64,000 nt of DNA, taken from the NCBI RefSeq assembly GCF_001194135.2, contig NC_069001.1, forward strand, positions 36,700,351-36,764,350. The letters run 5' to 3'. A program made the translations under genes and the position numbers. The notes under the pieces were generated by a model. That model was given only the letters and a program-made list of their open reading frames with translations. It made no database searches and was not told the DNA's origin. This document shows, one piece after another, positions 26,376 to 55,847 of this stretch. Numbering within the stretch: the first letter of the stretch is position 1; each line of letters begins with the position of its first letter. The stretch is from Octopus bimaculoides (taxonomy: Eukaryota).

Positions 26376-26494
26376 AAAGCAGTAGTTCTCAGCCAGGGTC
26401 CATGTAAGATTTTGCTGCTAATACTAGGGTCAGTATAATCGACTTACCCCTTTCCCCAAACTCACTGGCCTTGTGCCAAAATTTGAAATCATCA

Positions 26495-26529
<35 letters not shown>

Positions 26530-26539
26530 TACTCTTCAG

Positions 26540-26696
26540 AATGAGATGAGTGCTTTGAAAGCAGACAATGACCGGTTAACTCGAATGGTCACCACTAAAA
26601 ACCTAAACATGTCGACTTCCTCCCTACATCACCAAGTGAGCAATGATTCTCTTGACCGCAGTCTTAGTTTGGCATCATCAGATCACGGTAGTCTTG
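26540..26696 (+). CDS. NAV: Neuron navigator exon (NEMSALKADNDRLTRMV...SDHGSL)
   Basis: cttcag| acceptor, G|gtaagt donor, 157 nt, phase 0 to 1; continues the coiled coil in frame. Confidence 0.93.
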
Positions 26697-28763
26697 GTAA
26701 GTAGAAACATTTCGTTTCCTCCATGCTCCCCACCTATTAACGTAACAAATATAATGACATTGTTTTTTCCTGTGTTTTTGTTAGGGTTTTTTTTCTTCAT
26801 TCTCCATTACCAGAACTCTTTATAGTGCACCAACATTATTATTATTATGTCAATGGGGATTGTTGGATCTACATTTGTCTCATGTACTTTCACCCTCTCT
26901 TTCCAATCTTTTTCTTTCTTTATCTCTCTCTTTCTCAATCTCTTTCATTCTTTGTTATCTATTCTCTTTCTCTCCTTCATACATCTTTCTTCACCACACG
27001 TCCAATCCTGCATCTATATATATGTGTATGTGTGTGTGTTTGTATTTGTGTACTACTGCTTCACGCAACCTGTATTGGTTTGTTTACTTAGCAGTTTGAC
27101 AAAAGAGACTTTTAAAAAATGAGGACTCGGTTTGTTTGTTTTTTTTGTTTTTGTTTTTTTTGTTTTTTTTGTAACTGGACCCTTTGAGGTGGTGCCCAAG
27201 CATGGCCACAATCCAGTGACTGAAACAAGTAAAAAAATAAAATAAAGATAAAGATTTACAGCTGTGCATTATCATTGTAGAAACTTTTATCTTTTCTGTC
27301 TAAATGAAATATTCCGTGTTTACCAAATTTTTTTATGAAAGTTAAAATCAAAGACTCAGGTGCTACGAGAGGAAAAAACTGTTTAAATTAGCTCCTTTTG
27401 TTATGTTTAAAAAGAATCTTTTCAGCTAAATTCATTTATTTNNNNNNNNNNNNNNNNNNNNNNNNNNNNNNNNNNNNNNNNNNNNNNNNNNNNNNNNNNN
27501 NNNNNNNNNNNNNNNNNNNNNNNNNNNNNNNNNNNNNNNNNNNNNNNNNNNNNNNNNNNNNNNNNNNNNNNNNNNNNNNNNNNNNNNNNNNNNNNNNNNN
27601 NNNNNNNNNNNNNNNNNNNNNNNNNNNNNNNNNNNNNNNNNNNNNNNNNNNNNNNNNNNNNNNNNNNNNNNNNNNNNNNNNNNNNNNNNNNNNNNNNNNN
27701 NNNNNNNNNNNNNNNNNNNNNNNNNNNNNNNNNNNNNNNNNNNNNNNNNNNNNNNNNNNNNNNNNNNNNNNNNNNNNNNNNNNNNNNNNNNNNNNNNNNN
27801 NNNNNNNNNNNNNNNNNNNNNNNNNNNNNNNNNNNNNNNNNNNNNNNNNNNNNNNNNNNNNNNNNNNNNNNNNNNNNNNNNNNNNNNNNNNNNNNNNNNN
27901 NNNNNNNNNNNNNNNNNNNNNNNNNNNNNNNNNNNNNNNNNNNNNNNNNNNNNNNNNNNNNNNNNNNNNNNNNNNNNNNNNNNNNNNNNNNNNNNNNNNN
28001 NNNNNNNNNNNNNNNNNNNNNNNNNNNNNNNNNNNNNNNNNNNNNNNNNNNNNNNNNNNNNNNNNNNNNNNNNNNNNNNNNNNNNNNNNNNNNNNNNNNN
28101 NNNNNNNNNNNNNNNNCCAACCACTTTACTTTAGAGTGTACTGGGTGCTTATTATGTGACACCGACACAAGTGCTTTTTGTGTGACACTACCATGAGTGC
28201 TTTTCATGTGGCACCAAAAAAAAATGTGAATCTAAATATGGTCAGATTCGAACAGTAAGTCAAAGACACTAAAATCACGTTTTTCTCTTTGGAAAGAACA
28301 ATGGAGAATTTGTGTGTTTTTCTTCATGAAGGGGTCAAAATGTTCCCCTTGGAAAGAACAATGAACTATATGTGTGTGTGTGTGTGTGTGTGTATACATA
28401 GGTGAGGTGGCAGAATTGTTAGCATGCAGGGTGAAATGCTCAATGGTATTTCATCCATCTTTTTGTTTTGAGTTCAAATTCTATTCTGCTGAGGTCGACT
28501 TCGCTTTTCATCCTTTCAGGTTCAAGAAAATTGGTACCAGTTTGGTACTGAGGTTGACATAATCAATTTAATTACTCCGGGTATGAGTGTGAAAGACTGC
28601 ATCCCTCTGCCAAGCCATTTTGGGTCAGTGCGGCAGAGAAGGCTCATCAAACCAGTATGATCTCAAACCATTTTCTGATCAAGAGAACATGCTGAGGCCT
28701 TCATCCTGCAGTGGGCTGAACATGGGCAATCCACTATATATATATATATGTATGTATGTATAT

Positions 28764-28960
28764 AAAAGACATGTTAGGATCCACAATGAGCAGAACTTAC
28801 CTGCAGGTATTGGTAGTTCAAATCAGAGGTGCAATCTGTGTGGGTATTTTTTCAAAACATTGTCTGGTTTAAAAAGCCACATCAGACGCCATGAAAGGGC
28901 TAAGGTGTAGGTGCAGGAGGTGGTCAAACTCTGTGTAAGGAGTAGACAACCATCATATGG
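28764..28960 (+). mobile_element. Probable RTE-type LINE 3' end with a C2H2 finger
   Basis: KRHVRIH..CNLCGYFFKTLSGLKSHIRRH (28830-28892), stop at 28908-28910, short tail; fused to a TA tract on the left. Confidence 0.55.
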
Positions 28961-29894
28961 ACAATAGTATATTGTGTGTGTGTTTTCCTTCCTTCCTGAA
29001 AGGGTCAAATCTTCTTCCTCTTAGAAAGAACTACAAACATTGGTATACTTTGTGTGTTTTCCTCACTGAAATAAACAATGCAAACCAACGTAGACACTCA
29101 ATTCCACAGGTCTAACTATCCCTCTTTTACTTCCCACAATAATGACTGGTACCTATTATATGATGCAGAGTCTGTTGTTTCACTTAAACCATCCAGATTC
29201 TTGTTCGTTTTCAAAAATGAATTCATAAACATGTGACTTGTGTATTTCACGAGGGATCTGGTTGTGAAGGGGTTAAAATATCAGAGACAGCTTGGCACGG
29301 GAGAGGTAAACTAAAAGAGGGGAAGGAAATCATGAAAGGCTTTATGTTATCTGCGTAATAGACTAAGGTAGACTTAGATCAAACAGTGGAACGGGTCTGG
29401 TGTAATTGTATAGCGTCTCATGGCTGCAAGAGGATGTTTGACAGCAGGGAAACTTAAGAAGACTAAACAAAGATAAGCTGTGCAAATGAAAACAGATCTT
29501 TTGGGGCAGCACTGACGATAATGATAGAAAATAATAATAATAATAATAATAATAATGAGAAAGATGGAAAATTACACTGAACTCTTCAGACTGCAATTCT
29601 ATGGTATTGAATTGCTAGCCACTCCCTCTAAAAAAAATAATGATATTTTGGTTTCAAATTTTGGCACAAGGCCAGCAATTTTGAGGGGAGGGGTAAGTTG
29701 AATTCATCAACCCTAGTTCTTAACTGGTACGTTATTTTATCCACCCCCAGAAAGATTGCACAGCAAGGTTGGCCTCAACAGAATTTAAACCCAGAAGGTA
29801 AAAAGTTGGAAGAAATACTGTGTAGTTACATTGCTGAAGTGTACTGCTATGCATTCATAAGAACTGTATCTAGTTTCTGATGGGGGCCCAGTGG

Positions 29895-30510
29895 AGGAGA
29901 GGTGCAGGAGTGGCTGTGTGGTAAGTAGCTTGCTTCCAACCACATGGTTCTGGGCTCAGTCCCACTGTGTGGCACCTTGGGTAAGTGTTTTCTACTATAG
30001 CTTCAGGCTGACCAAAGCCTTGTGAGTAGATTTGGTAGACGGAAACTGAAAGAAGCCTGTTGTACATATATATATATGATGATGATGATGATGATGATGA
30101 TAGATATATATATATATATATGTATGTGTGTTTGTGCGTCTGTGTTTGTTCCCCCCCCCCCTAACATCGCTTGACAACCGATGCTGGTGTGTTTATGTCC
30201 CTGTAACATAGCGGTTTGGCAAGAGAGACCGATAGAATAAGTACTAGGCTTACAAAGAATAAGTCCTGGGGGTGATTTGCTCGGNNNNNNNNNNNNNNNN
30301 NNNNNNNNNNNNNNNNNNNNNTAACATCGCTTGACAACCGATGCTGGTGTGTTTATGTCCCTGTAACATAGCGGTTTGGCAAGAGAGACCGATAGAATAA
30401 GTACTAGGCTTACAAAGAATAAGTCCTGGGGGTGATTTGCTCGGCTAAAAGCAGTGCTCCAGCATGACTGCAGTCAAATAACAGAAACAAGTAAAAGAAT
30501 AAAAGAATCC
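29895..30510 (+). mobile_element. Near-complete family C SINE (contains an artefactual 123-bp duplication across a gap)
   Basis: Head aggtgcaggagtggctgtgtggtaag, internal microsatellites, tail gtgctccagcatgactgcagtcaaataacagaaacaagtaaaagaat. Confidence 0.9.
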
Positions 30511-30981
30511 TTCTGACGTTGATAATAAGATAGATGTGTGTTTTTGAGAGGCCACGGTAGAGCAGGGTTAAGGGGTACCCTTCCCCTCGTTGAATCAGTG
30601 CTTAGTTCTGCACTGTGTAGCATCAAATGGACGGGAAGATGAAACTCCTTGAGGATAGGATGTCAGCTGAAGCGAAGAAAGGCGACTCGTTGCTTGTTAA
30701 TTCAGGATGTAATGTGGGTGGGAGTGAGTCGGGGTACGGGCGTGGTCATGGTGACATGACGGTGTGCGTTAGGGGGCTTAAATTTGAGAGGTTCCTTAAC
30801 TAGACCGTCATCATCATCACCGCCACCACTTTTGCCATCATCAACATCATCATAATCACTGTTGTCATCATAATGGAAATGGCAGTGGTGGTGGTGTTAT
30901 TGTTTCATCTCAAATCCGTTCAAATTGAGAAATCTTATGATCTAGGATCAAATCCAATGTGTTTCTTACTTTTCTCTCTCT

Positions 30982-31020
<39 letters not shown>

Positions 31021-31589
31021 CTCGCTCTAATACAAACAAAAATGAGGTATGATTTGAGGAAGATTTTACTGCTCTTTCTAGCAATGTAAATGTCTGCACA
31101 GTCAGAGTGGCATTGAAGGCCGTTGCTGCTTCTTTTTGCATTTCTTGTCAAGCATCAGTTTTAGTCATGTTGTCCTGCCACCAGAGCTGTCTTCCCATTC
31201 CTGAAATTCCTAACTTTGTGCCAATGGTACGCCTTCCTTATTGAAAAGGAAAGAAAACAAAGAACTAAAGGAGGGTTGTGAGTTGACAGAGGAGATTGAT
31301 CATCACCATCATCATTATCATCACCATCATCATCTTTGCTCATTTTAATGTCCGTATTTGCATGGCTCAAATGGAATTTGTTGAGTCAGATTTTCAATGG
31401 CCCAATTGCCCGTCTTGTTGCCAGTCCTTACATGCTTCCAAATAAGATGGTATTTCCCCATGGCCAGATATGGATGATGGAAAATGAAGGGCACCTCGTT
31501 TGATGATGCTCATTTACAAGTAACACATCTTGTCAAGACAAGACATCACTCACACACACACACACACACACACCATCATCATTATCATT

Positions 31590-31902
31590 ATCATCATTTA
31601 ACATCCGTTTTCCATACTGCCATAGGTTGAACGGTTTGACTGGGGTCTGGGAAGCCAGGAAGCTGCACCAGGCTTCAATCTGATCTGGCAAGGTTTCTAC
31701 AGCTGGATGCCCTTCCTAACGCCAACCACTCAGAGAGTGTAGTGGGTGCTTTTTACATGCCCCCAGCATAGGGGCCAGTCAGGTGGCACTGGCATCGACC
31801 ACACTCAAATGGTGCTTTTTACATACCACTAGCACAGGTGCCAGTCAGGCGGCACTGGCCTCAACCCCGCTCGAATGGTTCTTTTTTATGTGCCACTGGT
31901 AC
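31590..31902 (-). mobile_element. Family D retroposon-like repeat with (GAT)n tail and internal 66-bp tandem units
   Basis: catcatcatttaacatccgttttccat...ggatgcccttcctaacgccaacc, then 66-bp units into a gap. Relatives near 37210, 49705, 54520, 61620 and 62375. Confidence 0.8.
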
Positions 31903-32593
31903 NNNNNNNNNNNNNNNNNNNNNNNNNNNNNNNNNNNNNNNNNNNNNNNNNNNNNNNNNNNNNNNNNNNNNNNNNNNNNNNNNNNNNNNNNNNNNNNNNN
32001 NNNNNNNNNNNNNNNNNNNNNNNNNNNNNNNNNNNNNNNNNNNNNNNNNNNNNNNNNNNNNNNNNNNNNNNNNNNNNNNNNNNNNNNNNNNNNNNNNNNN
32101 NNNNNNNNNNNNNNNNNNNNNNNNNNNNNNNNNNNNNNNNNNNNNNNNNNNNNNNNNNNNNNNNNNNNNNNNNNNNNNNNNNNNNNNNNNNNNNNNNNNN
32201 NNNNNNNNNNNNNNNNNNNNNNNNNNNNNNNNNNNNNNNNNNNNNNNNNNNNNNNNNNNNNNNNNNNNNNNNNNNNNNNNNNNNNNNNNNNNNNNNNNNN
32301 NNNNNNNNNNNNNNNNNNNNNNNNNNNNNNNNNNNNNNNNNNNNNNNNNNNNNNNNNNNNNNNNNNNNNNNNNNNNNNNNNNNNNNNNNNNNNNNNNNNN
32401 NNNNNNNNNNNNNNNNNNNNNNNNNNNNNNNNNNNNNNNNNNNNNNNNNNNNNNNNNNNNNNNNNNNNNNNNNNNNNNNNNNNNNNNNNNNNNNNNNNNN
32501 NNNNNNNNNNNNNNNNNNNNNNNNNNNNNNNNNNNNNNNNNNNNNNNNNNNNNNNNNNNNNAAACACTAATAATAATAAGTATAAATATAAAA

Positions 32594-32656
<63 letters not shown>

Positions 32657-33939
32657 CAGCAGCAGCAGCAGCAGTAATAATAGAGGTATAAGAACTGCTT
32701 TTAGCCAAATATTATTTTTGTGTTTGTATGTGTGTGCGTGTGCATATATATATGTGTGTGTGTATGCGTGTGTGTCATTCTTTGTGATTGTGTGTATGTA
32801 TATATGCAGGTATATTTGAATGTGTACATAGGTGTGTGCATCTATGTATATGTATATATTTCCCTCCCTCTCTCTCTCTTTCTCTCTCCTCATGTGTGTG
32901 TGTGTGTATATACACAGGCATATAGACATCCACACACCCACATTCACTCCCCACCTTGCCTAATCAGTGTGTGCTCATAGATATATCCAAGTATAAGGTT
33001 TCAGTAATAGGTTTTTATTAAGTACGAAAATATCCTTAAAAATATAGGATCTACACATCATTGCCTCCACCATGTGTCGATGTATTCCTCTCCTGTACAC
33101 ATGCGTGCATGTGTGTGTGTGTTAAAGAAAATATGTATCTAACTCCAAATTGAATATTAAAAATATATTAAATTTTTAACATTACAATCTAAAATAAAAT
33201 CTATATTATTAACAGGATGTGTTTAAATAAGAAGTAAAGGAAGGTGAGGTCATATTTTTTCCGTTAGTTGCATTGATAGATTATTAAATGGTGATGGTGG
33301 CGGTGGTGGTGGTGGTGGTTGCAGTGTAGAGCAAGGAAATAAATAGCATTTGTGCAGAGAAACTGCAGGAAGCCTCTGTCTTGAATTCCAAGAATCACTG
33401 TTCTTATTTTGCATTCCCAAAACAGCTGTTATCACATGCAGAACGGATCCGGCTTTCAGCCAAATCTGTCATGAAGATCCACCCACCGTTTTGCTTTGCT
33501 TTGGCTACGAAGGGTGGGTTGCTGGTTGTCTTTTATTTTTTTTCTGCTCAGTGTCTACTGCAGCACCAAAGATTGTTGGGTTGACAAATGAGCTTTTCCT
33601 CTTTCAGAGAAAATCCTCTTCAGTTTCTTTGAGGAAATTCTTGTTTCAGACAAAAATGTATGAAAGGTTGGTGAGAGAGGCAAAATTGGTGTAACTAAGT
33701 CACTGGTATAGCCTGCTCGTGAAGTTAATGTGCAAGTGGCTGAGTACTCCACAGACATGTGTACCTTTAATGTTGTTCTGAGGGAGATTCAGTGTGACAC
33801 AGAGTGTGACACAGAGTGTGACAAGGCTGGCCACTTTGAATTACAGGCACAACTTGTTTGCACCAACTGAGTGGACTGGAGCAATGTGAGGTAAAGTGTC
33901 TTGCTCAAGGACACAATACTTAACAGTATTTCTTTGGAC

Positions 33940-34540
33940 TTTTCATGATCTGAGTTCAAATTCTGCTGTGATCAACTTTGCCTTTCATACTCTAGGGGTT
34001 AACAAAACACTGTTACTAATCAAATACTGGGGCCAACTGGTAGCCTTGTGCCAAAAATTAGAAAGAATTATTATTGTTATTCAGGCGTCAAGCTGGTAGA
34101 ATTGTTAACATTCCAGACAAGTTGCTTAGTGGCATTTCATCCAACTTTATATTCTGGGTCCAAATTTTGCCGAGGTCGACTTTGCCTTTCATCCTTTCAG
34201 GGTCGATGAAATAAGCACCAGTCAAACACTGGGGTCAATGCAATCAACTTACCCCCTGCCCCCAAATTTCAGGCCTTGTACCTGTAGTAGAAAGGATCAT
34301 TATTATTATTATTATTAAGATGGTGAGCTGGCAGAATCATTAGCATGCCAGGCAAAATACTTAGCAGCATTTCACCCATCCTTACGTTCTGAGTTCAAAT
34401 TCTGCTGAGGTCGATTTTGTTTTTCGTCCTTTTGGAGATTGATAAATTAAGTACCAGTTATGCACTGGGGTCGATGTAATCAACTGGTCTCCTCCCCCCC
34501 AAAAAAATGTCAGGCTTTGTGCCTATGGTAGAAAGGATTA
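33940..34540 (+). mobile_element. Three head-to-tail family A SINEs
   Basis: About 33940-34070, 34081-34300 and 34317-34540 with (ATT)n spacers; CpG sites mostly decayed. Confidence 0.85.
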
Positions 34541-35754
34541 ATAATAGTAGTAATAATACTGCATTTTAGCTCTGAGTTAAATGAAAACTCCCTTACTTGA
34601 AAATGCCGGTAAGGATCAATGACTGCCTCTGGCTGTAGAATAATATCTCAGTAGAATGTACTTCTCTAACCCATGCTATCATGGAAAATCAGATGTAAAG
34701 TAAATGAACAAATATAATTGCTCTACAGTCATGTTGTCTTTCAAAAATGTGTGCGTGTGTGTGGGGGTTACTAATGAGTAAGATGTTAGTTAAGTCTGCA
34801 GTTGATGGCGAAGGCAAGATCAGATTCCAAAACCAAGAAATAACCGAAACCTTTGCAAATTAACGAGAAAAGAGGAGAGAGTGTGTGTGTGTGTGTGTGT
34901 TACAAGCTCAGAACCATGTAACTATGTAACATGATTAGACAATTAGTACAAGGAATATTCTGTATGAGATAAGAGAGAAAGAGATTGTTTGAAAACCTTG
35001 GTACGATGAGTTCTGTTAAGGATCTCACTTACACACACACACACACACTTTGTTCTCTCTGTCTCTTTCTCTTCTTCTTTCCCCTTTTTTTTTCTACCCA
35101 GGTATGCAACAAATGCATACCAAATGCATCATCATCATCATTATTATCTTTGGACTTGTACAGATATTTGTACATTAGTCATTCTGGAAACTGATTCCAT
35201 GGCTTTATTACAAGGTTTCATTTTATTTTATTCCGTTTTCGTTATTTATTATTATTTTTTTTCTCTCTCTCTACCCATGTGCCAACATACACACACATTT
35301 TCATTACAACCAGTCTATTATATCTAGATTACGCTAACTTACGCAACTAGCAGCAGCAGCAGTGGTAGACCCTACGAATACTAAAAGTGCCTGAGTTGCA
35401 TTGATTTTCATGTGACTGAAGTACTTTTTAGAATTTGGTTGTGTCGGGGGGGAGGGGGTCTTTTGGTTGCTTCTCAACAAATTCTTCCACTTTCTCTGTA
35501 ATATAGGTTCAAGTCATTTTTTAGTGTATGCATACTTTACACGCACACTCACATATATATATATCGAATGTATTCATAACATACATTATAGATACACGCT
35601 CGTAAATAAATACGTGCATATATATAATAAGAAATATTACACACACACACACACCTTGGGCGAGTGTCTTCTACTATAGCCTCAGGCCAACCCAAAGCCT
35701 TGTGAGTGGATTTGGTAAAGAGAAACTGAAAGAATCCCATTGTATACATCTATA

Positions 35755-35787
<33 letters not shown>

Positions 35788-35791
35788 TTAT

Positions 35792-36095
35792 ATGATGGTG
35801 CATGGCTTAGTGGTTAGGGTGTCGGACTCACGATAGTGAGATCGCGGGTTTGATTCCCAGACTAGGCGTTGCGTTGTGTTCTTGAGCAAAAGCACTTTAT
35901 TTCATGTTGCTCTGCGATCATTTCGACATCTGCCATGTGACACCCAGTTGCACCTGGACAGGTAATGTCAATTTGATGGAGGGAGTGAGCTTATGTCTAC
36001 CCAGACATTTGATCACTATAAACAAATCATTTGTGTGGTTGTTCGGTAAGAAATTGCCAAACCCTCATACATCGTCTGATGACGAGAGAATCCAT
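35792..36095 (+). mobile_element. Family B SINE with a distinct tail
   Basis: ggtgcatggcttagtggttagggtg...gggtttgattccc head and gtgttcttgagcaaaagcac core. Confidence 0.8.
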
Positions 36096-36921
36096 TATAT
36101 ATATATATACACATATACACGACAGGCTTCTTTCAGTTTCCATCTACCAAATCCAGTCACAAGGCTTTGGTCGGCCCAAGGCTATAGTAGAAGACACTCA
36201 ATCCCCAAAGTGGCACACAGTAACTGCTTACATACATGGCTTTAGAAATGAGAGAATGTGATTTCAATATGTAATGAGAAATGTATGTCTGTGTAAGAAA
36301 AAGAAAAAGTGTGTGTGTGTGTGTGTGATATTTTAGCAACTTCATAAAATGACTGACTTCCAAATTCCCCAATTCTTCAAATGTGCAACTGAAAACAAAT
36401 GTATGCATGTGTGTGTGTGTGTGTGTAATATTTTATTATGTATATGCAAGTATATATTTATGAGTGTGTATATATTGTGTATGTTATGAATATATTCATA
36501 TATGTATACATTTCTTATTTGAAAAAGAGAGACGGTGGGGGAGGGGGGGGCACAAAGAGAAGAAAAAATTCTATGAAAAACACTATTTTCTAACTGCTTG
36601 TATTGGAATGGTTTTGATAACAAGAATCTGTTGCCATCTATGCATGGTTTTAGTAATTTGGTAAATGGAAACGCCACTTGTGCATTACCAAAAATCAAAA
36701 AAATATAAAGAAAGAAAGAAAGAAAGAAGAAAAGAATAAATTTGTCCCCAGAATGATACAAAACAGACAACGATATGCATATAGAATATTTGAAATAGAA
36801 ATTTACTTTCCATTATTGAAAAATAAAAGAAAAAACAATGAAATGGTATAAATTACTCGGACAGTCTTTGGAATCTATTGTACGGATGAGCTGAACGTGA
36901 TGTGATAATATTTAGGTTGTT

Positions 36922-36973
<52 letters not shown>

Positions 36974-37724
36974 CCTTGTAGTTGTAATAGTCAGCCACAA
37001 TACTTTCTGTCCATATTTGTTATGCTGTCGTTTCAATCTGAGCACACCAGATTCAGAAATGTTTATTATTTGCACCTACTTACTTACACATTGCGCTCCT
37101 ACTAGGAAATGCTTCGTGAAAATTATTTGGAATTTTTTTTGTGTGACGTGTATTTTGATACTTGAAATCCTACGAGTGTTTCACTGCTGTCAAAATTCAG
37201 TGTCTGACATCATCATCATCATCGTCGTCGTCGTTTTTAGCATCCACTTTTCCATGCTTGCATGGATGATATGGAATTCGTTGAGACAAATTTTCTACAG
37301 CAGGATACCCTTCCTGTCACCAACCCTCAACAGTTTCCATGTCATGTAATATTTCCCCATGGCTGGACATGTTCTCACAGAAAATTGAGAGTGAATTGAC
37401 ACCGCTTGTATGAAGGTGATGCTCACTTACAACTATCGCCTATTGCTAAAAGGAGGTACAAACATATACACTAGCATGCACACTCACACATACCTCAAGA
37501 CAGCAAGCAATATATATATATATATATATGGGTGGGTTAGTGACTGGTTAAAATAACCATCTAAGGGATAGAAATAGCTATTACACTACTGGTATATTAC
37601 CTATATTTAACCATGGGCATACATATGCAAACATATTATGTTCATAAGTTATAGGCAAAGACAAGGATAAACATGGATTTTCCATTTTCTGTTTTCGTTA
37701 AATATATACATATATATATATATG

Positions 37725-37783
<59 letters not shown>

Positions 37784-37926
37784 GTAGGTATGTAGATAGA
37801 TAGATATGCACCCAAGATCTATTTGTAACCAGTTAGCTTCACTTGGGTTAACAACACAACCATACACCACATCTTCCATGCTTGCTAAGGCACTGTCCTA
37901 CGTCCTACTCCGCACAACCAGGTGCC

Positions 37927-37979
<53 letters not shown>

Positions 37980-38529
37980 GAAGAACTTACCTCTTAACAC
38001 TGAAGCACTTTAGTTATTAGTTTTAGAATTAATTTGGATCATAATTCTGAGAATATGAAATAAGAAAATTTACCGGTGATACAAACAAAAAAGAAAGAAA
38101 TTAATAAATAAAGCAGATTGAATATTTCCACCAACATTTCTGAGTATAGTGAATTATATCTGTAAAATACAATAACTCTAGATTTTAAGATGTCTCTAGT
38201 AGGTTATGTAAAACTTAAGGGAAAATGCCCAAAAAAGAATGAAGAAAAAAACGTTTGGCAACATTTTGAAAAATATAGAAATTTGTTTGGCTTCATTTAA
38301 TGGACTTAAATATCTGAAATCTGATTTTAATTGTAGTTTTAAAAATGTTGCAAAACGATATTCTTCAAACTCTTTCGTCATTGTCATTGCCATCGTCGTC
38401 GTCATCATCATCATCACCATTGAAGTGTTTGCCTGTAGTTTAAAATACTCCTATGTATTGATAGTTTCTTTAGACACAATGTTGTGGCAGTAATGGTGGT
38501 GGTGGTGGTGACTTCGTCATGCTGGCAGT

Positions 38530-39225
38530 TGTTGCATCTCATTAAAGGCACAAGGCCGGTAATTTTGAGGGCCAGGGTGCAGAAGTTAATCACATCAATC
38601 CCAGTATTTGACTGGCTTATTATTTCAATCGACCCTGGATGAATGGAAAACAAAGCTTCTATCAATAGGATTTGAACTCAGGATGTGAAGAGCCTGAAGA
38701 AATATTGCAAAGCATTTTTTTCTGATGCTCAAACAATTTTGCCAACTCACTGCCTTTAATGATGATGATGATGATGATGATGACTTGAAACTTTGGCAGA
38801 AGGCTAGCAAGTTTGGGGAAGGGGTCTGGTCAATTACATCGACCCCCAACGCTCAACTGGTACTTATTTTATCAACTTGTAAAGGATGAAAGGCAAAGTC
38901 AACCTTGGTGGAATTTGAACACGAGACAGAAAGACAAATGAAATGCCATTGAACATTTTACTTGGCGTGCTAACGATTCTACCAGCTCACCGCCTTAATA
39001 ATGATGATGATAATGATAATAATAATAATAATAATCCTTTCTACTAAAGGCGCAAGGCCTGAAATTTGTGGGGAGGAGGATAGTCGATTACATCAACCCC
39101 AGTATTTCACTGAAAGTACGACAGGTAAAGTTGACCTCAGCGGAATTTGAATTCAGAACATAAAGACTAATGAAATGCCACTAGGCATTTTGTTTGGCAT
39201 GCTAACGATTCTGCCAGCTTGCCAA
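38530..39225 (-). mobile_element. Three head-to-tail family A SINEs
   Basis: About 38530-38757, 38785-38997 and 39035-39225 with (GAT)n/(AAT)n spacers. Confidence 0.85.
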
Positions 39226-42200
39226 AGAATATTGTACCGTTATAATATCATGCTACACATAGATTTGTTTAAAGGAAGGGAAACAGGAAGAACATCCAGC
39301 CAAAGAAAAATAATCTGCCTTTGATAAATCTTATCCAACCCATGCAAACGTGAAAATGCAGAAGTTAAAACCACAATGGCAGCAATGCTGTTGATGATAG
39401 CAAAGATGATGATGATGATGATGATATGTGTGCGCATATTTGTGTGTGCATTGGTCAGGGTGCCGTGTGCATCTGCGATGGTGGAATGTTTTCGTTGCAC
39501 AGAATATGTAATGTAAGCAGGAGACGTCATGAATCTTTGGTCCCTTGTGCATCTGTTTGCTCTGTTGTTGCAGTAACATGAGAGGTAGGTTCTTGGTTAT
39601 CTTGAAAAATGAAAAATGAACAGCCATGTGCATGCATGCACACGTGTGTGTGTGTGTGTTAGATCCCATGTTTTGCTTAATTGCAAATCGTACATTAAGA
39701 TGGACAATTAGTGAGCTTTTTCTCACAGCATATGATAACAACTAATACGTAACACACACACACACACACACGTTATGTTAGTTCATGATTATCGTCGTTA
39801 TCCATCACAAGGGAGAAGAAGATGGGTTACAGCATGTCCAGTTGTGGCCAATCAGTCGAAGGGCTCTGTCACAGGTCAGGCATTGGTGATCTGCAGGAAC
39901 GGAAGGCAAGGAGTTGGTTCTGGACTGGCACAGTTCTCATTTTCTTTGTACCCCTGCAATCCTGTTCTGTCTGTAAGGGGTCACACACACACATATATAT
40001 ACACAGCAGGCTTCTTACAGTTTCCATCTACCAAATCCACTCACAAGACTTTGGTCAGCCTGAGGACACTTGCCCTAGGTTCCACACAGTGGGACTGAAC
40101 CCCAAACTACATGGTTTGGAAGCAAATTTCTTACCATGCAACTCCTTATAAGGGAATTATTCCTAGAATCTCTGCAAGAGGTAGGGCAGGCAAGCAGACA
40201 GGCAGGCATGGGTGATAGATATCAGGAAGCAAAAGGGGTGCGAAGTGGGAGTGGGTGGGGGTTGGGGGGTACCAGGCTCAACAGGGTGTTAAAAAAAATT
40301 AGAAACAAAAGAAAATACGATAATGGCACAAGTAATTGGTTCTGAGATTGCGGTTGATGATAATACGTGCAGCTTGAGCATGTAACATGTACCCCGGTAT
40401 CAAATAGCTGCCTCTTTCTCCTCTGACAAAATGACATTCTCGGCTCTCCCTGCCCCCTACTGTCGAAGGGGCCCCTTTCACCACCTCCCCCACCACCACA
40501 TCACTCAACCACTGGGAGACATGAGACATGCAAATATTCTAAGTTGGACTTGTCACTTTGTAAGAGATGAGACAAACTTAAAGATGACATAATTGCTGAT
40601 GATGGCTTCAGGGGTGGAGAGGAGGATAGAGAAAGAGAGAAAGCCTCAGAAATAGAGTGAGACAGACAGACAGAGAGAGAGAGAGAGAGGGCTTCATTGA
40701 GAAGGCAGATAGATAGATAGATAGATACCTTGAGAGATGGAGGGAGAGAGAGGAGAAGAAGAGAAAGGGAAAAGGTTTGATTTTCAAGGTTAATCTTTAG
40801 TGATATTTAAGAATATACTTAAATCCCCATTAGTAAACTATTCAGGATTTTGTTTTGTTTTGTTTTTTCTTGTTCTGTGGAAGTGTGCTTGAACTGTGAG
40901 TGACATAATGCTGCATATGTATCTACATTTCCCCCCTGTGTGTGTGTGTAGTTTTAAGATATTAGCTATGGAAGAAGGGGTACAGAAATATCATGTTATA
41001 AGTTGTCACTTAACGAAGAAAAAGTTCATCCAAAAAAAAAAAGTAAAGGAGCTTATCAGTATGTTATTATGGTTACACTAAATGTCAAAGACAGCTTCTG
41101 TAATTTAGAAGAATTAATTGTGACAAATGAGGTGGGAAGGGGTGGAGCGGACGTTTGATTGCACTAACGTCCGACAAGCAAGATCCTTCATGCCGTGGTT
41201 CCGTGCCGATGTTTGGCTTATGGACTTAATAAGGGAAGATTAATTTCCAAATTTCTGTCTGTAATTTTTGCTNNNNNNNNNNNNNNNNNNNNNNNNNNNN
41301 NNNNNNNNNNNNNNNNNNNNNNNNNNNNNNNNNNNNNNNNNNNNNNNNNNNNNNNNNNNNNNNNNNNNNNNNNNNNNNNNNNNNNNNNNNNNNNNNNNNN
41401 NNNNNNNNNNNNNNNNNNNNNNNNNNNNNNNNNNNNNNNNNNNNNNNNNNNNNNNNNNNNNNNNNNNNNNNNNNNNNNNNNNNNNNNNNNNNNNNNNNNN
41501 NNNNNNNNNNNNNNNNNNNNNNNNNNNNNNNNNNNNNNNNNNNNNNNNNAAAAGCAGGGAAGACATGGTTTGATGGCAATAAAGTTTATAAAAGATTCAG
41601 AATCTAATTTAATCTTTTATCTTTTACTTGCTTCAGTCGTTAGACTGTAATGAGCTGGCAGAATTGTTAGCACACCGGGCAACCTGCTTATTGGGATTTC
41701 ATCCATTTTTATGTTCTGAGTTCAAATTCTGCCAAGGTCAACTTTGCCTTTCATCCTTTCAGGGTCCGTAAAATAGTACCAGTTACATACTGGGACTGAT
41801 GGAATCTACTCCCTCCCCCAACTAAATCTACTGGCCTTGTGCCAAACATTTCCAACCATTATTATTAATTATTTAGATTTTTGTTTTATGTTTTCTTTTT
41901 TGATTTTGTTTCTTAATTACAAATATATTTTCATTTTGAAAAAAGTCAAAAATTCGATTACATTTTAGTTTCTGTTTAGACAGGACACCTCTTTAGTCTT
42001 TTCATTTTCAAATTTTTGTCATTTGGCATGTGTGTGTGTATTGTTATTATGTGATGGCTGTAAATGAGTGCCACTGTTACAAAAGCAGTGTCATTTCTTT
42101 CCAATATTCTGCAATTATAAATGTAAGTGTAAGGATTGGGCCCAAATAATAATAGCCCACATCAGACAGAATGAATGAAAAATATAAATAAAAATGAAGC

Positions 42201-42438
42201 CTTCATCAGCTGTCTCACTCGGGATTCTAACAGTTTCAATACCTTCAAACAGAAAACACACCCACTTACACACAAATATATTCTAATGCTCACATTTTGA
42301 AACTGGGATTGAAGTTGGTGAAGAAGCATGATTATAAACATGGAATCCATTCCTGCATCAAATGTGAATGACACCAAAAAGAAGAGTAGAGTAGGTCGTT
42401 CTGGTATTTTTTTTTAATGCTTTCTCTTTGCTTTTCAG

Positions 42439-42483
42439 GCAGAAGAAAACAAAAAATGGGAATGAAATCTCCTACACAGTCAG
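42439..42483 (+). CDS. NAV: Candidate alternative cassette exon of NAV (G-RRKQKMGMKSPTQS)
   Basis: Acceptor tttctctttgcttttcag|, donor CAG|gtatag, 45 nt, phase 1 to 1, open in the NAV frame. No homology or RNA support. Confidence 0.6.
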
Positions 42484-45400
42484 GTATAGAAACAGCGTTT
42501 AACACTAACACACAATGTTATGGCCTGACATAGAACTGCTTAATGATTTATATATAAAGAGAGAAAGTAGTGCACTTGTTATATCAAAAATATAGAACAC
42601 CATTTAACACTAACACACAGTATTACAGCTAAACATAGAGTTGCTTAATCACTTGCTCACTGATGTAGTTATACTCATACGCATGCTTGTTTGTGTATAT
42701 TCTTTTATTCTTTTCAGCCCTAAGGTTGTGGCCATCCACATTAATATATATATTTATTATTGAATGTATTTTACAAACATGTAACACTCTCTTACAGTAC
42801 TTGGAGATTTCCAGCAAGTCACGGGTATGAAGTGATCCTATAATGGTTGCACACAACAGCTAATGCACAGTGGCATGTGTGTTGATTACAAATTAAAAAT
42901 TGGTTAGCTCCATACCTGTGGCTTGCTGGGAAACTGTGAGTACTGTCTGTGAGGGTTCTATGTTGGTATAATATGCTGAGTATCAAATATATTCCTCTTT
43001 GTCAATGATATTGAGGTCTACTTTTTTTTGTTGTTACACTTGCAGTTAATCATTTTATAAATACGTTGGAACAAAATGTTTTTGGTAGTGAACAGAATAG
43101 TTTATTTATTGGTATTAATAATAAACGAATTAATTGTTCTTTAGTTTATTTATGGAAAGTCTTCAAATTTCTCAAGGTAATGAAATGAAATAAAATGGAG
43201 TGAAATTAAAGAGGAATATTTATGCAATTATCCCCCACCATAGCTGGGGGTCTTTATCTCACAAGTTACTTGGTGACCCCCACTAGTGCTGGTGCTTAAC
43301 TAATAAACTGTGCCAAAGTAGATAGTGGCGCTTGGTGCTGTCCCCTGATTAACCAGTACCAGTCAAACCAGCCAACCCATACCAGCATAGAAAGCAGACA
43401 TTAAATGATGGTTTTGTTTTTTGTTTTTTTTCATTTCATTTCCTTGGCTAATTAGAAGACTTTCTGTATCTCTATATACAAACAAAGGAACGATTTCTTC
43501 ATTTCTTGTAGCATTATTATTACCAATATATATGTGTGGAGTGCATCTATTACATCAAAATATTTCTGTTTCTAACGATTTATGATTACATTTTTTTTTT
43601 TTTTTTTAATTATTGGTTTCCGTTCCTTAACCATCTTTGTCTTTCCCAAACTAAAATTCCTGGAATCCAGATCATTGAATAAATACAACAGGGATATTTT
43701 ATTAGGATTTCTTACAGATTCATTTCTTTAACCAACTTAAGCGTTCACAACAACAACAACAATAAAACTAATCAAATGTTTGCCATTTGACTCACGACTT
43801 CCACCATTGACTTCTTCTTCACCTTTTTCCTCTTCTTTGCCTTCTTCATGTTCTTCCTTCTTTTCTTCCACCTCTTCTTCACCACTTTCACCTCTTCTCT
43901 TTCTCCGCCACAAACGATGAGACACCTTTAATTACAAAACCTATATTAGATGACATCCAAATGTTTACACACAAAGGTTTCCAAGAGGAATCCCAAAGAA
44001 AGACATATCTTTTTCTATTCTTTCTTTTTTTGTTTTTTTGTTCTTCCCCCACCCCCACCCCATATGTGTTGACTTCAAGAGACAAGAATGATGCCAGACA
44101 AAGCCGGAAGTAGAAAGATTAAGAATCAGGGGGCAGATGGGTGGGGAGGTTATTACTATTCGATGTGATGTGATGTGACAATTTCTATCGCAAATTCACA
44201 AGTTGTTTGGTTTTAAAATGAAGTCAAAGGAATAAAAGGAGTATGAGGTGACAGTGGCAGCGGTGGTGTAAGATTAGAACCTCTTGTAACAATGGATTAG
44301 TTAAACAAAGCAAAGACACTTATAGACATTATCCTTATTAAAGGCGGCGAGCTGACAAAACCATTAGCACACCGGGCGAAATGCTTAGCGGTATTTCATT
44401 GAGGGATATTTGGCTACTGTTTCTATTTGGTTTGTGGTGACCGCATAGCATCTCCCTTGTTTCACTCCTTTCTTAGGAAACATGTTGGTGATTTCAGAGC
44501 AGAGAATGAGCTTGTCAATGGGGAGATCATGAATGGTGATAGAAGAACTTTGACAAACTTAACTGGTTTATTGATTAACCAAACAATTAATCGAACAGTC
44601 AATTAGTTAATTGATTGAATGGTTAACCAATTAACAAATAAATAATGAAGAAGTGAAATAGAACCGGTGTGTGTTTATTATTGGCATATTGACCCTCCCA
44701 AGATACAACAAAATCTGTTTCAAGACAGGAGTTCATGTCAAGAATCATGCAAACCAAATACAAGACAAAATTTTATAAAGAATTGTTATATTTTCTATTA
44801 TTTTTAATTCCATTATAACATTTTGTTTGTCAAAATTAGCTCAGAACATTGAAACTAGTTTTCGGTTTACTAGAACAATTAACTTGTTTTTTATGTTTTG
44901 TTTTGCATTGTTTTGTTTTGTTTCTGTCCCTAACAAAAGACCTTAAAAAAAACAAAAATGATTGAAAATGATTTTAAAATATTTTCTGGGGGTTTTTTTT
45001 TCTTTTTTTCCACTTTTATAGTTAACAACAAAAAAAGACCTTATTTCTATTTTATCAATTTAATTAATTACATCATAAAATACACACACGCACACACATG
45101 CATGCATACAGCCACACACATATACATATATATATATACATATATGTTTGCTGGTATTATCTGATATCAATAAATTTGATTGTTTATCTTTTTCTTTTGG
45201 GGTCAGTAAGGGTTCTTTGTTTCCCATTTTTTCCTCTTGTTTATCACATTTTCATTCATATTAAACATCAACTTCAAATGATAAAGAAATTTTGTTTGAT
45301 TTTTTAAATTTTTTTTTTTATGCTGTTGTTTTGAAAAATCTGTCTCTCCATCATGTGCCTATATACATACATACATACATACATTTATTATATTGTGTTT

Positions 45401-46414
45401 ATTTATGACAACAGACTGTAGCGAAACAATTAGGTTATGAACACGAGACTTTAACATTTGTTCATTAACAAGCTTTTGTTTTAACATTAACCTTTCTTTA
45501 ACATTTTCGTTTTTACCTTTTTTTCAAATTGTGTTTTGAATTGACTCTTGCATATCAAATTATTTACATAGACATAGACATACAACACAATTGATGGTAG
45601 ACCTAATATGTCACCTGGTTTAACGCCACCATCTGGCACCTTGGGGGCGGTCTTTATTGGACCTCATTCTGTTGCAAGAATTCAGGCCAGGTTAGGGGTC
45701 TGGTTTGAGGTTATATTTCTGTCTTACCACCCACCAGTCCCAGAAGCCCTGTGAAGAGTCACAGGAACACTCTTCCCTCCTGACTAAAAGATTACAAAAT
45801 TTTAATAAAAAAAAAACAAAAGCAATATATAAATAACCTCCACCTTCCCACCCACCCACTGGAGAACATCTTCCAGCTGCATTTACCAATTCCATGAAAA
45901 ACTCTGATGAATCGAGAAGCAAGATTTGCTGTTCTCAAAATGAAACATCTTACAAATTGTAAATAAATGTTGTAAATATAAATTAGAAACTCTGCCCTCC
46001 AATACATGTCATTGAGTACTATTTTTAATTTGCAGACATCTTAAATCTTTTACTAAGGTGTATATGTGTATGTATGAGTGTGTGTCTGTATACACACTCA
46101 CATATTTATTTAACCATGTGACAGTCTTAGGATTATGGCCGTTTTGCAACTTTCTTCATGTAATATTAATTTCAGTGCGGAAGAAATTATGCTAACATCT
46201 TTGAATTAATATGTCTGCTCCACATTGTATATTAAAAAATCAATGGAAATCAAGAATCTGTGGTACCGAGCAGAATATTTGCTGTAGTTCATCCTTTATA
46301 CCCAGACAAAACAATGTACAGGATAACACTTCCAATCAGTTGAGTTCAGAAGCCACGAGAGCCACTGCCTGGTACTGCATCATCATCATTATTATTATTA
46401 TTATTATTAATTTT

Positions 46415-46630
46415 TAAGGCAATGACTTGACAGAGTCGTTAGCACACTGGACAAAATGCAACATTTCATCGGCCTTTATGTTCTGTGTTCAAATTCAGCC
46501 AAGGTTGCTTTTCCTTTTCATCCTTTTGGGAGGTCAATGAAATAAGTACCAGTTAAGCACTGCGGTCAGTGTAATCAACTTACACCCTCCACCAAAAATT
46601 GCTGGCCTTGTACCAAAATTTGAAACCATT
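46415..46630 (+). mobile_element. Family A SINE upstream of a NAV acceptor
   Basis: Matches the consensus, followed by (ATT)n. Similar single copies near 28400, 29645, 41650, 44341, 49031, 58240 and 61383. Confidence 0.85.
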
Positions 46631-46635
46631 AATTG

Positions 46636-46681
<46 letters not shown>

Positions 46682-46707
46682 ACTTTTCTTTTTTGTTCTA
46701 CTTTCAG

Positions 46708-46805
46708 ATATAATGCAGATCCCAGAGACTCCTGATCGTGAAGGAAAGCGAGTAACAATCACTGTTTACTTGGGGTCAAATCCTGATCCAACTAGGGCTC
46801 CAGAG
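46708..46805 (+). CDS. NAV: Neuron navigator exon (DIMQIPETPDREGKRVTITVYLGSNPDPTRAPE)
   Basis: ctttcag| acceptor, GAG|gtcagt donor, 98 nt, phase 1 to 0; joins 26696 as G+AT = Asp. Confidence 0.88.
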
Positions 46806-49032: not shown

Positions 49033-49304
49033 GGCAGTAAGCTGGCAGAACCGTTAACACGCCGGGCGAAATGCTTAGCAGTATTTCATCCATCTTCATG
49101 CTCTGAGTTCAAATGCTGCCAAGGTCAACTTTGCCTTTCATTCTTTTGGGGTCAATAAATTACGTACCAGTTACACACTGGAGTCGATGTAATCGACTTA
49201 ATCCCTTCCACAAAATTTGAGGCCTTGTGCTTCCAATAGAAAAGATTATTATTATTAGTAGTAGTAGTAATATCATGTGTGTATATTTTCTTTTCTAATT
49301 GCAG

Positions 49305-55775: not shown

Positions 55776-55847
55776 CCCTTACATAATAGGAACGATGAAC
55801 CAAGCTACTGGACTAACCACCAACCTGCAACTACACCATAACTTCAG
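55776..55847 (+). CDS. NAV: Neuron navigator exon (CPYIIGTMNQATGLTTNLQLHHNFR)
   Basis: ttgcag| acceptor, AG|gtgagt donor, 72 nt, phase 2 to 2. Confidence 0.96.

What the first reader, a model, noticed from the sequence alone, without database searches (positions are those of the whole stretch)
42421..42490. Hidden 45-nt in-frame cassette exon adding a basic, SP-containing peptide
Seen: a strong acceptor and CAG|gtatag donor, length a multiple of 3, phase 1 to 1 matching the host intron, and no stop. The product is ...SDHGSL-GRRKQKMGMKSPTQS-DIMQIP.... It is too short for the ORF track. Inference: a regulated insert between the coiled coil and the AAA module carrying an NLS- or microtubule-binding-like RRKQK and a proline-directed kinase site (KSP).
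Basis: partly seen in the sequence, partly recalled or inferred. Interest (0 to 1): 0.7.

Follow-up and report, generated by a model that had tools for sequence, protein, structure and literature searches.

The report
Conserved 45-nt navigator cassette exon

Summary
The sequence facts hold. Window 42439-42483 (+) is 45 nt, bounded by ttttcag| and |gtatag. It is phase 1 to 1, has no stop codon, and reads SDHGSL-GRRKQKMGMKSPTQS-DIMQIP. It lies in a 20-kb intron of a neuron navigator (NAV/UNC-53) gene.

Sequence statistics alone could not separate it from a chance pseudo-exon; 0.14-0.5 such candidates are expected per intron. External evidence settled the question.
- RefSeq XP_052831530.1 (Octopus bimaculoides "neuron navigator 3-like isoform X1") contains exactly this peptide. 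Isoform X2 (XP_052831531.1) lacks it.
- The cuttlefish Sepia pharaonis has the exon in the same intron. It differs at 4 of 45 nt, all synonymous, while the surrounding introns cannot be aligned.
- Four spliced RNA-derived contigs, from at least two decapodiform species, join exon B, the cassette and exon C exactly at the predicted sites.
- More than 60 non-cephalopod navigators lack the insert.

So this is a coleoid-cephalopod-specific exon at least about 240 million years old. It sits in a disordered linker between the coiled coil and the ubiquitin-like domain that precedes the AAA+ module.

The NLS, microtubule-binding and kinase-site ideas remain untested. Skipping is documented only by one RefSeq model. 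The exon is real and conserved, but already annotated.

The parts
42439..42483 (+). 45-nt cassette exon, phase 1 to 1, encoding (G)RRKQKMGMKSPTQS; purine-rich core GAAGAAAACAAAAAATGGGAATGAAATCTCC
   Evidence: Sequence read. The peptide is identical in RefSeq XP_052831530.1. The orthologous exon in Sepia pharaonis is L016 72499-72543; it differs at 4/45 nt, all synonymous. It is spliced into 4 RNA-derived contigs.
42407..42438 (+). Polypyrimidine tract and 3' splice site (ttttttttt aat gctttctctttgcttttcag); possible branch point in tttttaat at about -24
   Evidence: Scores 14.1 bits on a generic matrix, top 0.12% of AGs. It is the only intronic flank that still aligns with Sepia: blastn 85% over window 42407-42487. 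The branch point is read by eye only.
42484..42489 (+). Weak 5' splice site CAG|gtatag (no A+4, G+5 or T+6)
   Evidence: Scores 5.1 bits, against 8.2-13 for the constitutive donors, which all have A+4 and G+5. Sepia has CAG|gtatga at 8.3 bits, so GTAT is shared.
26540..26696 (+). Upstream constitutive exon B (NEMSALKADNDRL...SDHGSL + first base of the split codon), the end of the second coiled coil and the start of the linker
   Evidence: The Sepia orthologue is L016 51232-51388.
26697..42438 (+). Upstream intron (15,742 nt), repeat-rich, with three assembly gaps
   Evidence: It is 21,110 nt in Sepia.
42484..46707 (+). Downstream intron (4,224 nt); a local 106-bp direct repeat (42485-42544 / 42591-42649) begins at the T of the donor GT
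   Evidence: It is 6,948 nt in Sepia.
46708..46805 (+). Downstream constitutive exon C (DIMQIPETPDREGKRVTITVYLGSNPDPTRAPE), the start of the NAV ubiquitin-like domain
   Evidence: The Sepia orthologue is L016 79492-79589.

Best explanation
Window 42439-42483 is a genuine 45-nt frame-preserving exon of the Octopus bimaculoides neuron navigator gene (NAV/UNC-53/Sickie family; RefSeq 'neuron navigator 3-like').

How it is spliced. The exon has a very strong U-rich 3' splice site and a purine-rich core (GAAGAAAAC...), paired with a weak GUAU-type 5' splice site. This combination is typical of exons whose inclusion can be tuned.

What it adds. When included, it inserts GRRKQKMGMKSPTQS (net charge +5, one Ser-Pro) into a mildly acidic, Ser-rich, predicted disordered linker. 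The linker joins the second coiled coil to the ubiquitin-like domain in front of the AAA+ ATPase. The insert splits the pan-bilaterian junction motif SL|D(I/M)LL.

Its history. The exon arose in the cephalopod lineage at or before the octopus/cuttlefish split, and its protein sequence has stayed invariant since.

Shown: it exists, it is spliced at these junctions, it is conserved under purifying selection, it lies in the linker, and it is absent outside cephalopods.

Annotated but not verified by me: it is skipped in some octopus transcripts (isoform X2).

Inferred: the peptide acts as a charge and/or phosphorylation-dependent interaction module of the linker. I put this at about 35%. I put a true NLS at about 10%. 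The extra conservation of synonymous sites reflects splicing-enhancer constraint.
For: (1) An exhaustive HMMER search and a cluster look-up give two RefSeq models. XP_052831530.1 (272 aa, isoform X1) carries ...SDHGSLGRRKQKMGMKSPTQSDIMQIP... XP_052831531.1 (257 aa, X2) lacks it. Both are 100% identical to the window's exons. The locus L013 (GCA_001194135.2, CM046621.1) is 100% identical to the window over the 645 nt compared (42139-42783), which include the exon.

(2) In the Sepia pharaonis genome (L016) the exon sits in the same intron, 21.1 kb after exon B and 6.9 kb before exon C, and is flanked by ttattttcag| and |gtatga.

(3) Octopus versus Sepia: 4/45 nt differ, all synonymous, with no amino-acid change. 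Exons B, C and D differ at 68/345 nt. Third codon positions changed at 2/14 in the cassette against 57/114 in the flanking exons (Fisher p=0.02). The introns do not align beyond about 35 nt upstream.

(4) Four Logan contigs from four SRA runs carry ORFs of 820-2246 aa. They join exon B|cassette|exon C without gaps. They are 99.2% and 93.8% identical to Sepia, so at least two species are represented.

(5) More than 60 navigators from bivalves, gastropods, annelids, arthropods, echinoderms and vertebrates have no insert at SL|D(I/M)LL. A mussel-like contig has the same phase-1 intron but no homologue of the exon.

(6) Pfam places the insert 12 residues before PF23092. An AlphaFold2 model places it inside a segment with pLDDT below 50 (residues 305-362), between helix 244-304 and the first Ubl strand at 366.

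(7) The Octopodiformes/Decapodiformes split is dated about 260-235 Ma (PMC12682272).
Against: - Skipping is documented only by one automated RefSeq model. I could not see RNA-seq reads.
- All 7 decapodiform sequences that span the junction include the exon, so it may be close to constitutive there.
- The RefSeq octopus models are truncated. They run through the exon D donor into the intron, which lowers trust in them as full transcripts.
- The comparison of synonymous sites rests on 14 codons.
- No test of the peptide's function was possible. The strict NLS consensus is not met, and one decapodiform has RRKPK instead of RRKQK.
- The origin before the coleoid split is inferred from two lineages. 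Nautilus and vampire squid were not available.
Confidence: 0.88

Rival explanations
1. The exon is effectively constitutive in cephalopods. The skipping isoform X2 would then be splicing noise or an artefact of automated annotation, so there is no regulated switch.
For: All 7 decapodiform sequences that span the junction include the exon: 3 Sepia pharaonis models and 4 RNA-derived contigs. Neither the cluster look-up nor the last word-index search found a skipping form other than XP_052831531.1. The Sepia donor is much stronger than the octopus one, 8.3 against 5.1 bits.
Against: To my knowledge, NCBI's pipeline normally issues alternative X-isoforms only when transcript or RNA-seq alignments support them; I did not check this here. 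The octopus donor is the weakest of the gene. Assemblers tend to report only the major isoform. Extra constraint on synonymous sites is typical of regulated exons.
Confidence: 0.2
2. It is a chance pseudo-exon: a T-rich tract plus AG that happens to be followed 45 nt later by a GT, and it is not used.
For: The sequence-only statistics allow it. The expectation is 0.14-0.5 such candidates per intron. The donor is weak. The exon's GC (37.8%) equals that of the intron (37.0%). Another pseudo-exon in the window (56081-56152) has stronger sites.
Against: It is present in spliced RNA-derived contigs and in RefSeq. Its protein sequence is perfectly conserved between octopus and cuttlefish while the introns around it are unalignable.
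Confidence: 0.01
3. Conservation is driven mainly by an RNA-level element, such as a splicing enhancer or silencer or an RNA structure that helps process the 20-27 kb intron. On this view the peptide is a tolerated passenger.
For: Synonymous sites are more conserved than in the flanking constitutive exons: 2/14 against 57/114 third positions. A 30-nt core is identical in octopus and Sepia. The core contains GAAGAA, a classic exonic enhancer hexamer.
Against: All four substitutions are synonymous and none is non-synonymous. Frame and openness are preserved. The exon is retained in mature mRNA rather than removed. The one variant seen (Q to P, a 2-nt change in contig L014) lies inside the core that is identical in octopus and Sepia. 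The two kinds of constraint do not exclude each other.
Confidence: 0.08

Closest known systems
RefSeq models XP_052831530.1 / XP_052831531.1, 'neuron navigator 3-like isoform X1 / X2' (Octopus bimaculoides)
   Same: They describe the same exon. X1 contains GRRKQKMGMKSPTQS at this junction and X2 omits it. Both match the window's exons 100%.
   Different: Nothing differs in the exon. The models are truncated: they start in exon A and run into the intron after exon D. The likely reason is that the next exon falls in an assembly gap. No publication describes the exon as far as my searches went.
Sepia (Acanthosepion) pharaonis navigator models CAE1311285.1, CAE1311282.1, CAE1311283.1
   Same: An orthologous exon in the orthologous intron, encoding the identical 15-aa peptide.
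   Different: The exon differs at 4 synonymous nucleotides. The donor is stronger (gtatga). No skipping isoform is annotated.
Alternative exons of vertebrate NAV1/NAV2/NAV3 and Drosophila Sickie
   Same: According to the review PMC9877351, navigator isoforms mainly alter disordered or low-complexity regions and leave the CH, coiled-coil and AAA+ domains intact. This exon follows the same logic.
   Different: It is not homologous. Mouse NAV2 X38-X40 and Fundulus NAV3 X10-X13 show no variation at the SL|D(I/M)LL junction.
Neural microexons (SRRM4/eMIC-dependent programme)
   Same: Short, frame-preserving, in a neuronal cytoskeletal gene, and inserted in a surface or linker region. Recurrent lineage-specific gain of such exons in the same genes is reported across bilaterians (bioRxiv 10.64898/2026.09.05.749416).
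   Different: At 45 nt it exceeds the strict limit of 27 nt. A UGC at -10 is present in octopus but absent from the Sepia acceptor. Neural specificity and dependence on the regulator are unknown.
Insert at the same junction in a Mytilus galloprovincialis model (P0178)
   Same: The same phase-1 intron after ...PSL has yielded an in-frame insert.
   Different: The sequence and origin are different. It is a 30-aa copy of the tail of exon B. This matches the tandem pseudo-copies of the exon end plus donor seen in the mussel-like contig L003.

Membership tests
Frame-preserving alternative cassette exon | Bounded by AG and GT, length a multiple of three, no in-frame stop in the phase of the host intron | tested here: met
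Frame-preserving alternative cassette exon | Present in spliced mRNA, joined to the neighbouring exons at those sites | tested here: met
   Four RNA-derived contigs of decapodiforms. For octopus, only the RefSeq X1 model.
Frame-preserving alternative cassette exon | Skipped in other mRNAs of the same gene | tested here: inconclusive
   The only evidence is RefSeq XP_052831531.1 (X2), an automated model. No reads were visible to me. 7 of 7 decapodiform sequences include the exon.
Frame-preserving alternative cassette exon | Conserved in related species as an island within diverged introns | tested here: met
   Octopus and Sepia are 91% identical over the exon with no amino-acid change. The introns are unalignable.
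Neural microexon (eMIC/SRRM4 type) | Length 3-27 nt | tested here: not met
   The exon is 45 nt.
Neural microexon (eMIC/SRRM4 type) | UGC motif close to the 3' splice site, conserved | tested here: not met
   Octopus has UGC at -10 and -21, but 24-28% of all AGs here have one by chance. The Sepia acceptor ...aaatcagttcctttattttcag has none.
Neural microexon (eMIC/SRRM4 type) | Neural-specific inclusion that depends on Srrm234 | not testable with these tools
   No tissue-resolved RNA-seq was available.
Neuron navigator (NAV/UNC-53/Sickie) family (host gene) | C-terminal AAA+ domain with Walker A, NAV-type AAA lid, NAV ubiquitin-like domain, preceded by coiled coils | tested here: met
   PF25408 at 2.3e-37, PF00004 at 5e-10, PF23092 at 5.2e-10, and GPSGTGKT present. 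The window's exons align to residues 1605-2154 of a full-length cephalopod navigator. The AF2 model shows a long helix followed by a Ubl fold and an AAA+ fold.
Classical monopartite NLS | K-K/R-X-K/R core, functional in nuclear import | tested here: not met
   RRKQK gives RKQK, with R rather than K at the first position. It fits only the relaxed [KR][KR]X[KR] pattern. Import was not testable. The review PMC9877351 warns that NLS predictions in navigators mostly reflect basic sequence.
SxIP EB-binding (+TIP) motif | [ST]-x-[IL]-P in a basic, acid-free, disordered context | tested here: not met
   There is no such motif in the insert. The nearby MQIP starts with M and is followed by acidic residues (criteria quoted from PMC9877351).

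The most novel reading that the evidence does not exclude
The invariant 15-residue basic insert is a coleoid-cephalopod innovation. It would act as a regulated switch on the navigator's Ubl-AAA+ module. For example, a Ser-Pro phosphorylation-gated basic patch could change binding to microtubules, membranes or a partner, or change nuclear access. It does this by splitting the otherwise pan-bilaterian SL|D(I/M)LL motif. On this reading it contributes to cephalopod-specific neuronal cytoskeletal regulation.
Probability: 0.15. Interest if true: 0.45.

Novelty: already known. Interest (0 to 1): 0.25.

Why it matters
For the scan, this is a clean positive control. A reader with no tools picked out a true 45-nt exon in a 20-kb intron from splice signals, frame and phase alone.

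It is also a caution. Chance statistics on the same signals could not tell it from a pseudo-exon, and a word-indexed protein search missed the decisive sequences that an exhaustive search found.

Biologically the interest is modest. The exon is specific to coleoid cephalopods among the navigators sampled and is at least about 240 million years old. Its protein sequence is invariant. It lies in a cytoskeletal regulator of neurite growth, at a junction where mussels independently gained a different insert. That fits reports of recurrent, lineage-specific gain of short exons in the same neuronal genes. No function is known for the peptide, for the linker, or for the navigator AAA+ module itself.

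Tried and rejected
1. Chance pseudo-exon. This was my working conclusion: weak donor, intron-like GC, and 0.14-0.5 expected per intron. Searches overturned it.

2. Repeat or transposon origin. Self-BLAST of 42101-42900 found no other copy in the window, only a local 106-bp direct repeat that starts at the donor. No neighbouring ORF on either strand hits Pfam.

3. Structured RNA. Rfam found nothing in the whole window.

4. Recursive splice site. The acceptor is followed by GC, not GT, so it is not a zero-length ratchet point.

5. First word-index protein search. It returned only exon fragments from metagenomes, with no cephalopod sequence. This wrongly suggested that no transcript data existed.

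6. Metagenome scan for relatives of exons C and D. It gave four short contigs, none from a cephalopod.

7. Search for a homologue of the cassette in non-cephalopod loci L001-L008 by tblastn and by enumerating pseudo-exons. None was found.

8. Literature. There is no paper on navigator microexons or on this exon. The supplements of the one study that quantified octopus splicing are not held.

9. Search for a skipping form in decapodiforms. None was found.
Full report
**Observation.** The sequence is as described. A long U-rich tract ends in ...ctctttgcttttcag at 42438. The next 45 nt (42439-42483) are GCAGAAGAAAACAAAAAATGGGAATGAAATCTCCTACACAGTCAG, followed by gtatag. The flanking exons are B (26540-26696...SDHGSL plus one base, donor TTG|gtaagt) and C (46708-46805, DIMQIPETPDREGKRVTITVYLG...). 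The intron between them is phase 1. Inserting the 45 nt gives ...SDHGSLGRRKQKMGMKSPTQSDIMQIP... with no stop.

**Host gene.** The + strand carries the 3' part of a neuron navigator (NAV/UNC-53/Sickie) gene. Concatenated exon peptides hit PF25408 (NAV1-like AAA lid, 2.3e-37), PF00004 (AAA) and PF23092 (NAV ubiquitin-like domain). The window's exons align to residues 1605-2154 of a full-length cephalopod navigator. The insertion point is 12 residues before the start of PF23092.

**Sequence-only assessment and why it misled.** I scored splice sites with a generic matrix.
- The acceptor scores 14.1 bits. That is among the 4 best of 3341 AGs on the + strand and better than every constitutive acceptor of the gene.
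- About ten equally strong non-exonic acceptors exist on the + strand, several of them inside SINE copies.
- The donor scores 5.1 bits. 82 GTs in the host intron are as good, and it is the only donor of the gene without A+4/G+5.
- Any AG has about a 7% chance of an in-frame, stop-free donor of that quality within 300 nt.
- A 45-nt stretch of this intron is open in a given frame half the time.
- The exon's GC (37.8%) equals that of the intron.

The expectation was 0.14-0.5 such candidates per intron. A stronger pseudo-exon that breaks the frame exists at 56081-56152. The candidate is not repeated in the window. No Rfam family and no Pfam domain lies nearby. The first protein search, which uses a word index, returned only genomic exon fragments and no cephalopod sequence. 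Two non-cephalopod relatives lacked the exon. In L001, exons B-D are fused. L003 has the same phase-1 intron, 1.3 kb long, with no homologue. At that point I leaned towards a pseudo-exon.

**Decisive evidence.** An exhaustive HMMER scan of 1.84 billion representatives, using the insert-bearing peptide as query, found two key proteins. P0086 matches at 100% identity over 115 residues, without the insert. P0085 matches at 96% identity over 130 residues, with the insert. Cluster look-up identified them:
- P0086 is XP_052831531.1, 'neuron navigator 3-like isoform X2 [Octopus bimaculoides]'.
- Its cluster mate P0169 is XP_052831530.1, isoform X1. It is 15 residues longer and reads ...SDHGSLGRRKQKMGMKSPTQSDIMQIP...

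The window is therefore O. bimaculoides. Locus L013 (GCA_001194135.2, CM046621.1) is 100% identical to the window over the 645 nt compared (42139-42783), which include the exon. The exon is already annotated as alternative.

The cluster of P0085 holds three Sepia (Acanthosepion) pharaonis models (CAE1311285.1, CAE1311282.1, CAE1311283.1) and long ORFs from Logan assemblies. All of these carry GRRKQKMGMKSPTQS. P0085 itself has RRKPK.

**Genomic conservation.** In the Sepia locus L016 the exon lies at 72499-72543, 21.1 kb after exon B and 6.9 kb before exon C. It is flanked by ttattttcag| and |gtatga.
- Octopus and Sepia differ at 4 of 45 nt (GGC/GGT, AGA/CGA, CCT/CCA, CAG/CAA). All four are synonymous.
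- Exons B, C and D differ at 68 of 345 nt, of which 7 are non-synonymous.
- Third codon positions changed at 2/14 in the cassette against 57/114 in the flanking exons (p=0.02; p=0.05 if the split first codon is counted).
- Outside the exon, only about 35 nt of the pyrimidine tract still align. 200-nt flanks give no meaningful local alignment.

The two lineages split about 260-235 Ma (PMC12682272). A conserved island with only synonymous change is the signature of a coding exon under purifying selection. Its synonymous sites are under extra constraint, as expected for splicing enhancers.

**Transcript evidence.** Four contigs from four SRA runs carry uninterrupted navigator ORFs of 820-2246 aa: SRR27666065, SRR23936173, SRR23936182 and SRR25158138. 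In Sepia the matching exons span about 49 kb of the 91-kb annotated gene (L016 43357-91958), so the contigs derive from spliced RNA. The concatenated Sepia exons B + cassette + C + D (390 nt) align to all four without a gap. Three contigs are 99.2% identical and one is 93.8% identical, so at least two decapodiform species are represented. The junctions are exactly ...GGCAGTCTGG|GTCGAAG...AATCAG|ATATTATG.

**Alternative or constitutive?** The only skipping form I could find is octopus X2. All 7 decapodiform sequences that span the junction include the exon, and the last search found no other skipping form. To my knowledge, NCBI's pipeline issues alternative isoforms on transcript support, but I could not inspect reads. 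The octopus models are also truncated: they read through the exon D donor. The next exon (EYVLRIDPVTNLGL...) is missing from both the window and L013, and probably lies in the gap at 49945-50477. I rate genuine alternative use at about 75%.

**Distribution.** More than 60 navigators read straight through a conserved SL|D(I/M)LL junction. They come from bivalves, gastropods, annelids, arthropods, echinoderms, amphioxus and vertebrates. They include several mouse NAV2 and killifish NAV3 isoforms. The insert is therefore a cephalopod gain. One Mytilus galloprovincialis model has a different 30-aa insert at the same junction. It is a duplicate of the tail of exon B and matches tandem pseudo-copies seen in L003. 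This intron has therefore produced in-frame inserts at least twice.

**Structural context.** An AlphaFold2 model of P0085 was built from a 50-sequence alignment. It gives a confident coiled-coil helix (residues 244-304), a low-confidence segment (305-362, pLDDT about 30) that contains the insert (338-352), then the Ubl strands from 366 and the AAA+ fold from about 479. The insert has net charge +5. Its neighbours have net charge -2 and -1.

**Mechanism.**
- Shown: the exon is defined by a strong 3' splice site and a weak GUAU-type donor. It is included in mRNA. It adds 15 invariant residues to a disordered linker.
- Inferred: the purine-rich core (GAAGAA...), identical in octopus and Sepia, acts as an exonic enhancer that compensates for the donor.
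- Inferred: the peptide provides a basic patch, possibly controlled by phosphorylation, that changes how the linker or the Ubl-AAA+ module interacts with partners.
RKQK misses the strict K-K/R-X-K/R core. There is no SxIP motif. A single Ser-Pro is minimal. The navigator review notes that NLS predictions in this family mostly reflect basic composition (PMC9877351). None of these ideas could be tested here.

**Comparison and novelty.** The exon matches an existing RefSeq isoform pair and existing cuttlefish models, so it is already known at the level of annotation. I found no publication on it. It resembles vertebrate navigator isoform variation, which alters disordered regions and spares the domains. 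It also resembles lineage-specific short neural exons. It fails the length and UGC criteria of eMIC-type microexons.

**Verdict.** The core interpretation, a cassette exon in the linker before the AAA+ module, is supported. The functional guesses are untested. Interest is low to moderate.

Noticed in passing
window 26428-26529, 46460-46670, 49083-49276 (+), plus at least 20 further copies on both strands: A SINE-like family (about 200 bp with an (ATT)n tail) has sense copies that end 10-40 nt upstream of three consecutive constitutive navigator exons (B, C, D). The repeat tail sits next to each polypyrimidine tract. The cassette exon has no such copy directly upstream; the nearest is at 41696-41873.
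   Followed up: partly
window 56081-56152 (+): A 72-nt pseudo-exon with stronger splice-site scores than the real cassette (acceptor 16.5, donor 7.8 bits). It lies in the phase-2 intron between exons 55776-55847 and 56874-. It carries a TGA in the host phase, so it would be a poison exon if used.
   Followed up: no
window 35102 and 9804 (+): Strong acceptors directly abut a GT (tcccctttttttttctacccag|GTATGC and ...ttttcccag|GTGAAT). They look like recursive splice sites inside very long introns. This could be chance, because the scoring favours G at +1.
   Followed up: no
window 49945-50477 (N gap); L013 26345-26877: The navigator exon encoding EYVLRIDPVTNLGLSAESVFSYHIGEIVRTKD is absent from the window and from the newer assembly locus. 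In Sepia it lies about 0.7 kb after exon D. It probably sits in this gap. That would explain why RefSeq XP_052831530.1/531.1 read through the exon D donor and end in the intron.
   Followed up: partly
L003 3767-4100; protein P0178 (Mytilus galloprovincialis): The mussel-like contig has three tandem pseudo-copies (about 115-bp period) of the 3' end of exon B plus its donor, inside the orthologous intron. A Mytilus gene model carries a 30-aa insert at the same junction that duplicates the exon-B tail. This is an independent in-frame insert at the same intron.
   Followed up: partly
L001 781-1143: In an unidentified lophotrochozoan-like metagenome scaffold (ERZ23487774, BUSC20-1), exons B, C and D form one exon. 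The introns at both junctions are absent.
   Followed up: no
L016 49624-49637 against L015, L017, L018: Four clustered A-to-G differences within 14 nt separate the Sepia pharaonis genome from all three Sepia-like mRNA contigs. They recode WLRSSFSKAF to WLRGSFGGAF. This looks like an A-to-I editing cluster, but the contigs may come from another individual or species (99.2% identity).
   Followed up: partly
proteins P0156 against P0158, P0085, P0087 (upstream of the window): There is a second variable site in cephalopod navigators. AEQK[WPHHLPM]DSELNELR is present in some Sepia isoforms and in the mRNA contigs, and absent in others; 7 aa corresponds to a 21-nt exon. Scallop has a different 15-aa insert (ECLAVKRSCRCKAKK) at the same site. 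The coding sequence was not found in the window.
   Followed up: no
window 2266-2961 (+), 21261-21479 (-), 28620-28910 (+): Transposon and other remnants lie in the introns. A LINE-type endonuclease fragment hits PF03372 at 4.4e-5, just under the family cut-off. A DDE_3 transposase fragment hits PF13358. There is also a lone C2H2 zinc-finger ORF. The window has 11 assembly gaps.
   Followed up: partly
tool behaviour: The word-indexed protein search, given a 139-aa query with stretches identical to RefSeq octopus proteins, returned none of them. The exhaustive HMMER scan found them at once. A negative result from the indexed search should not be read as absence.
   Followed up: yes
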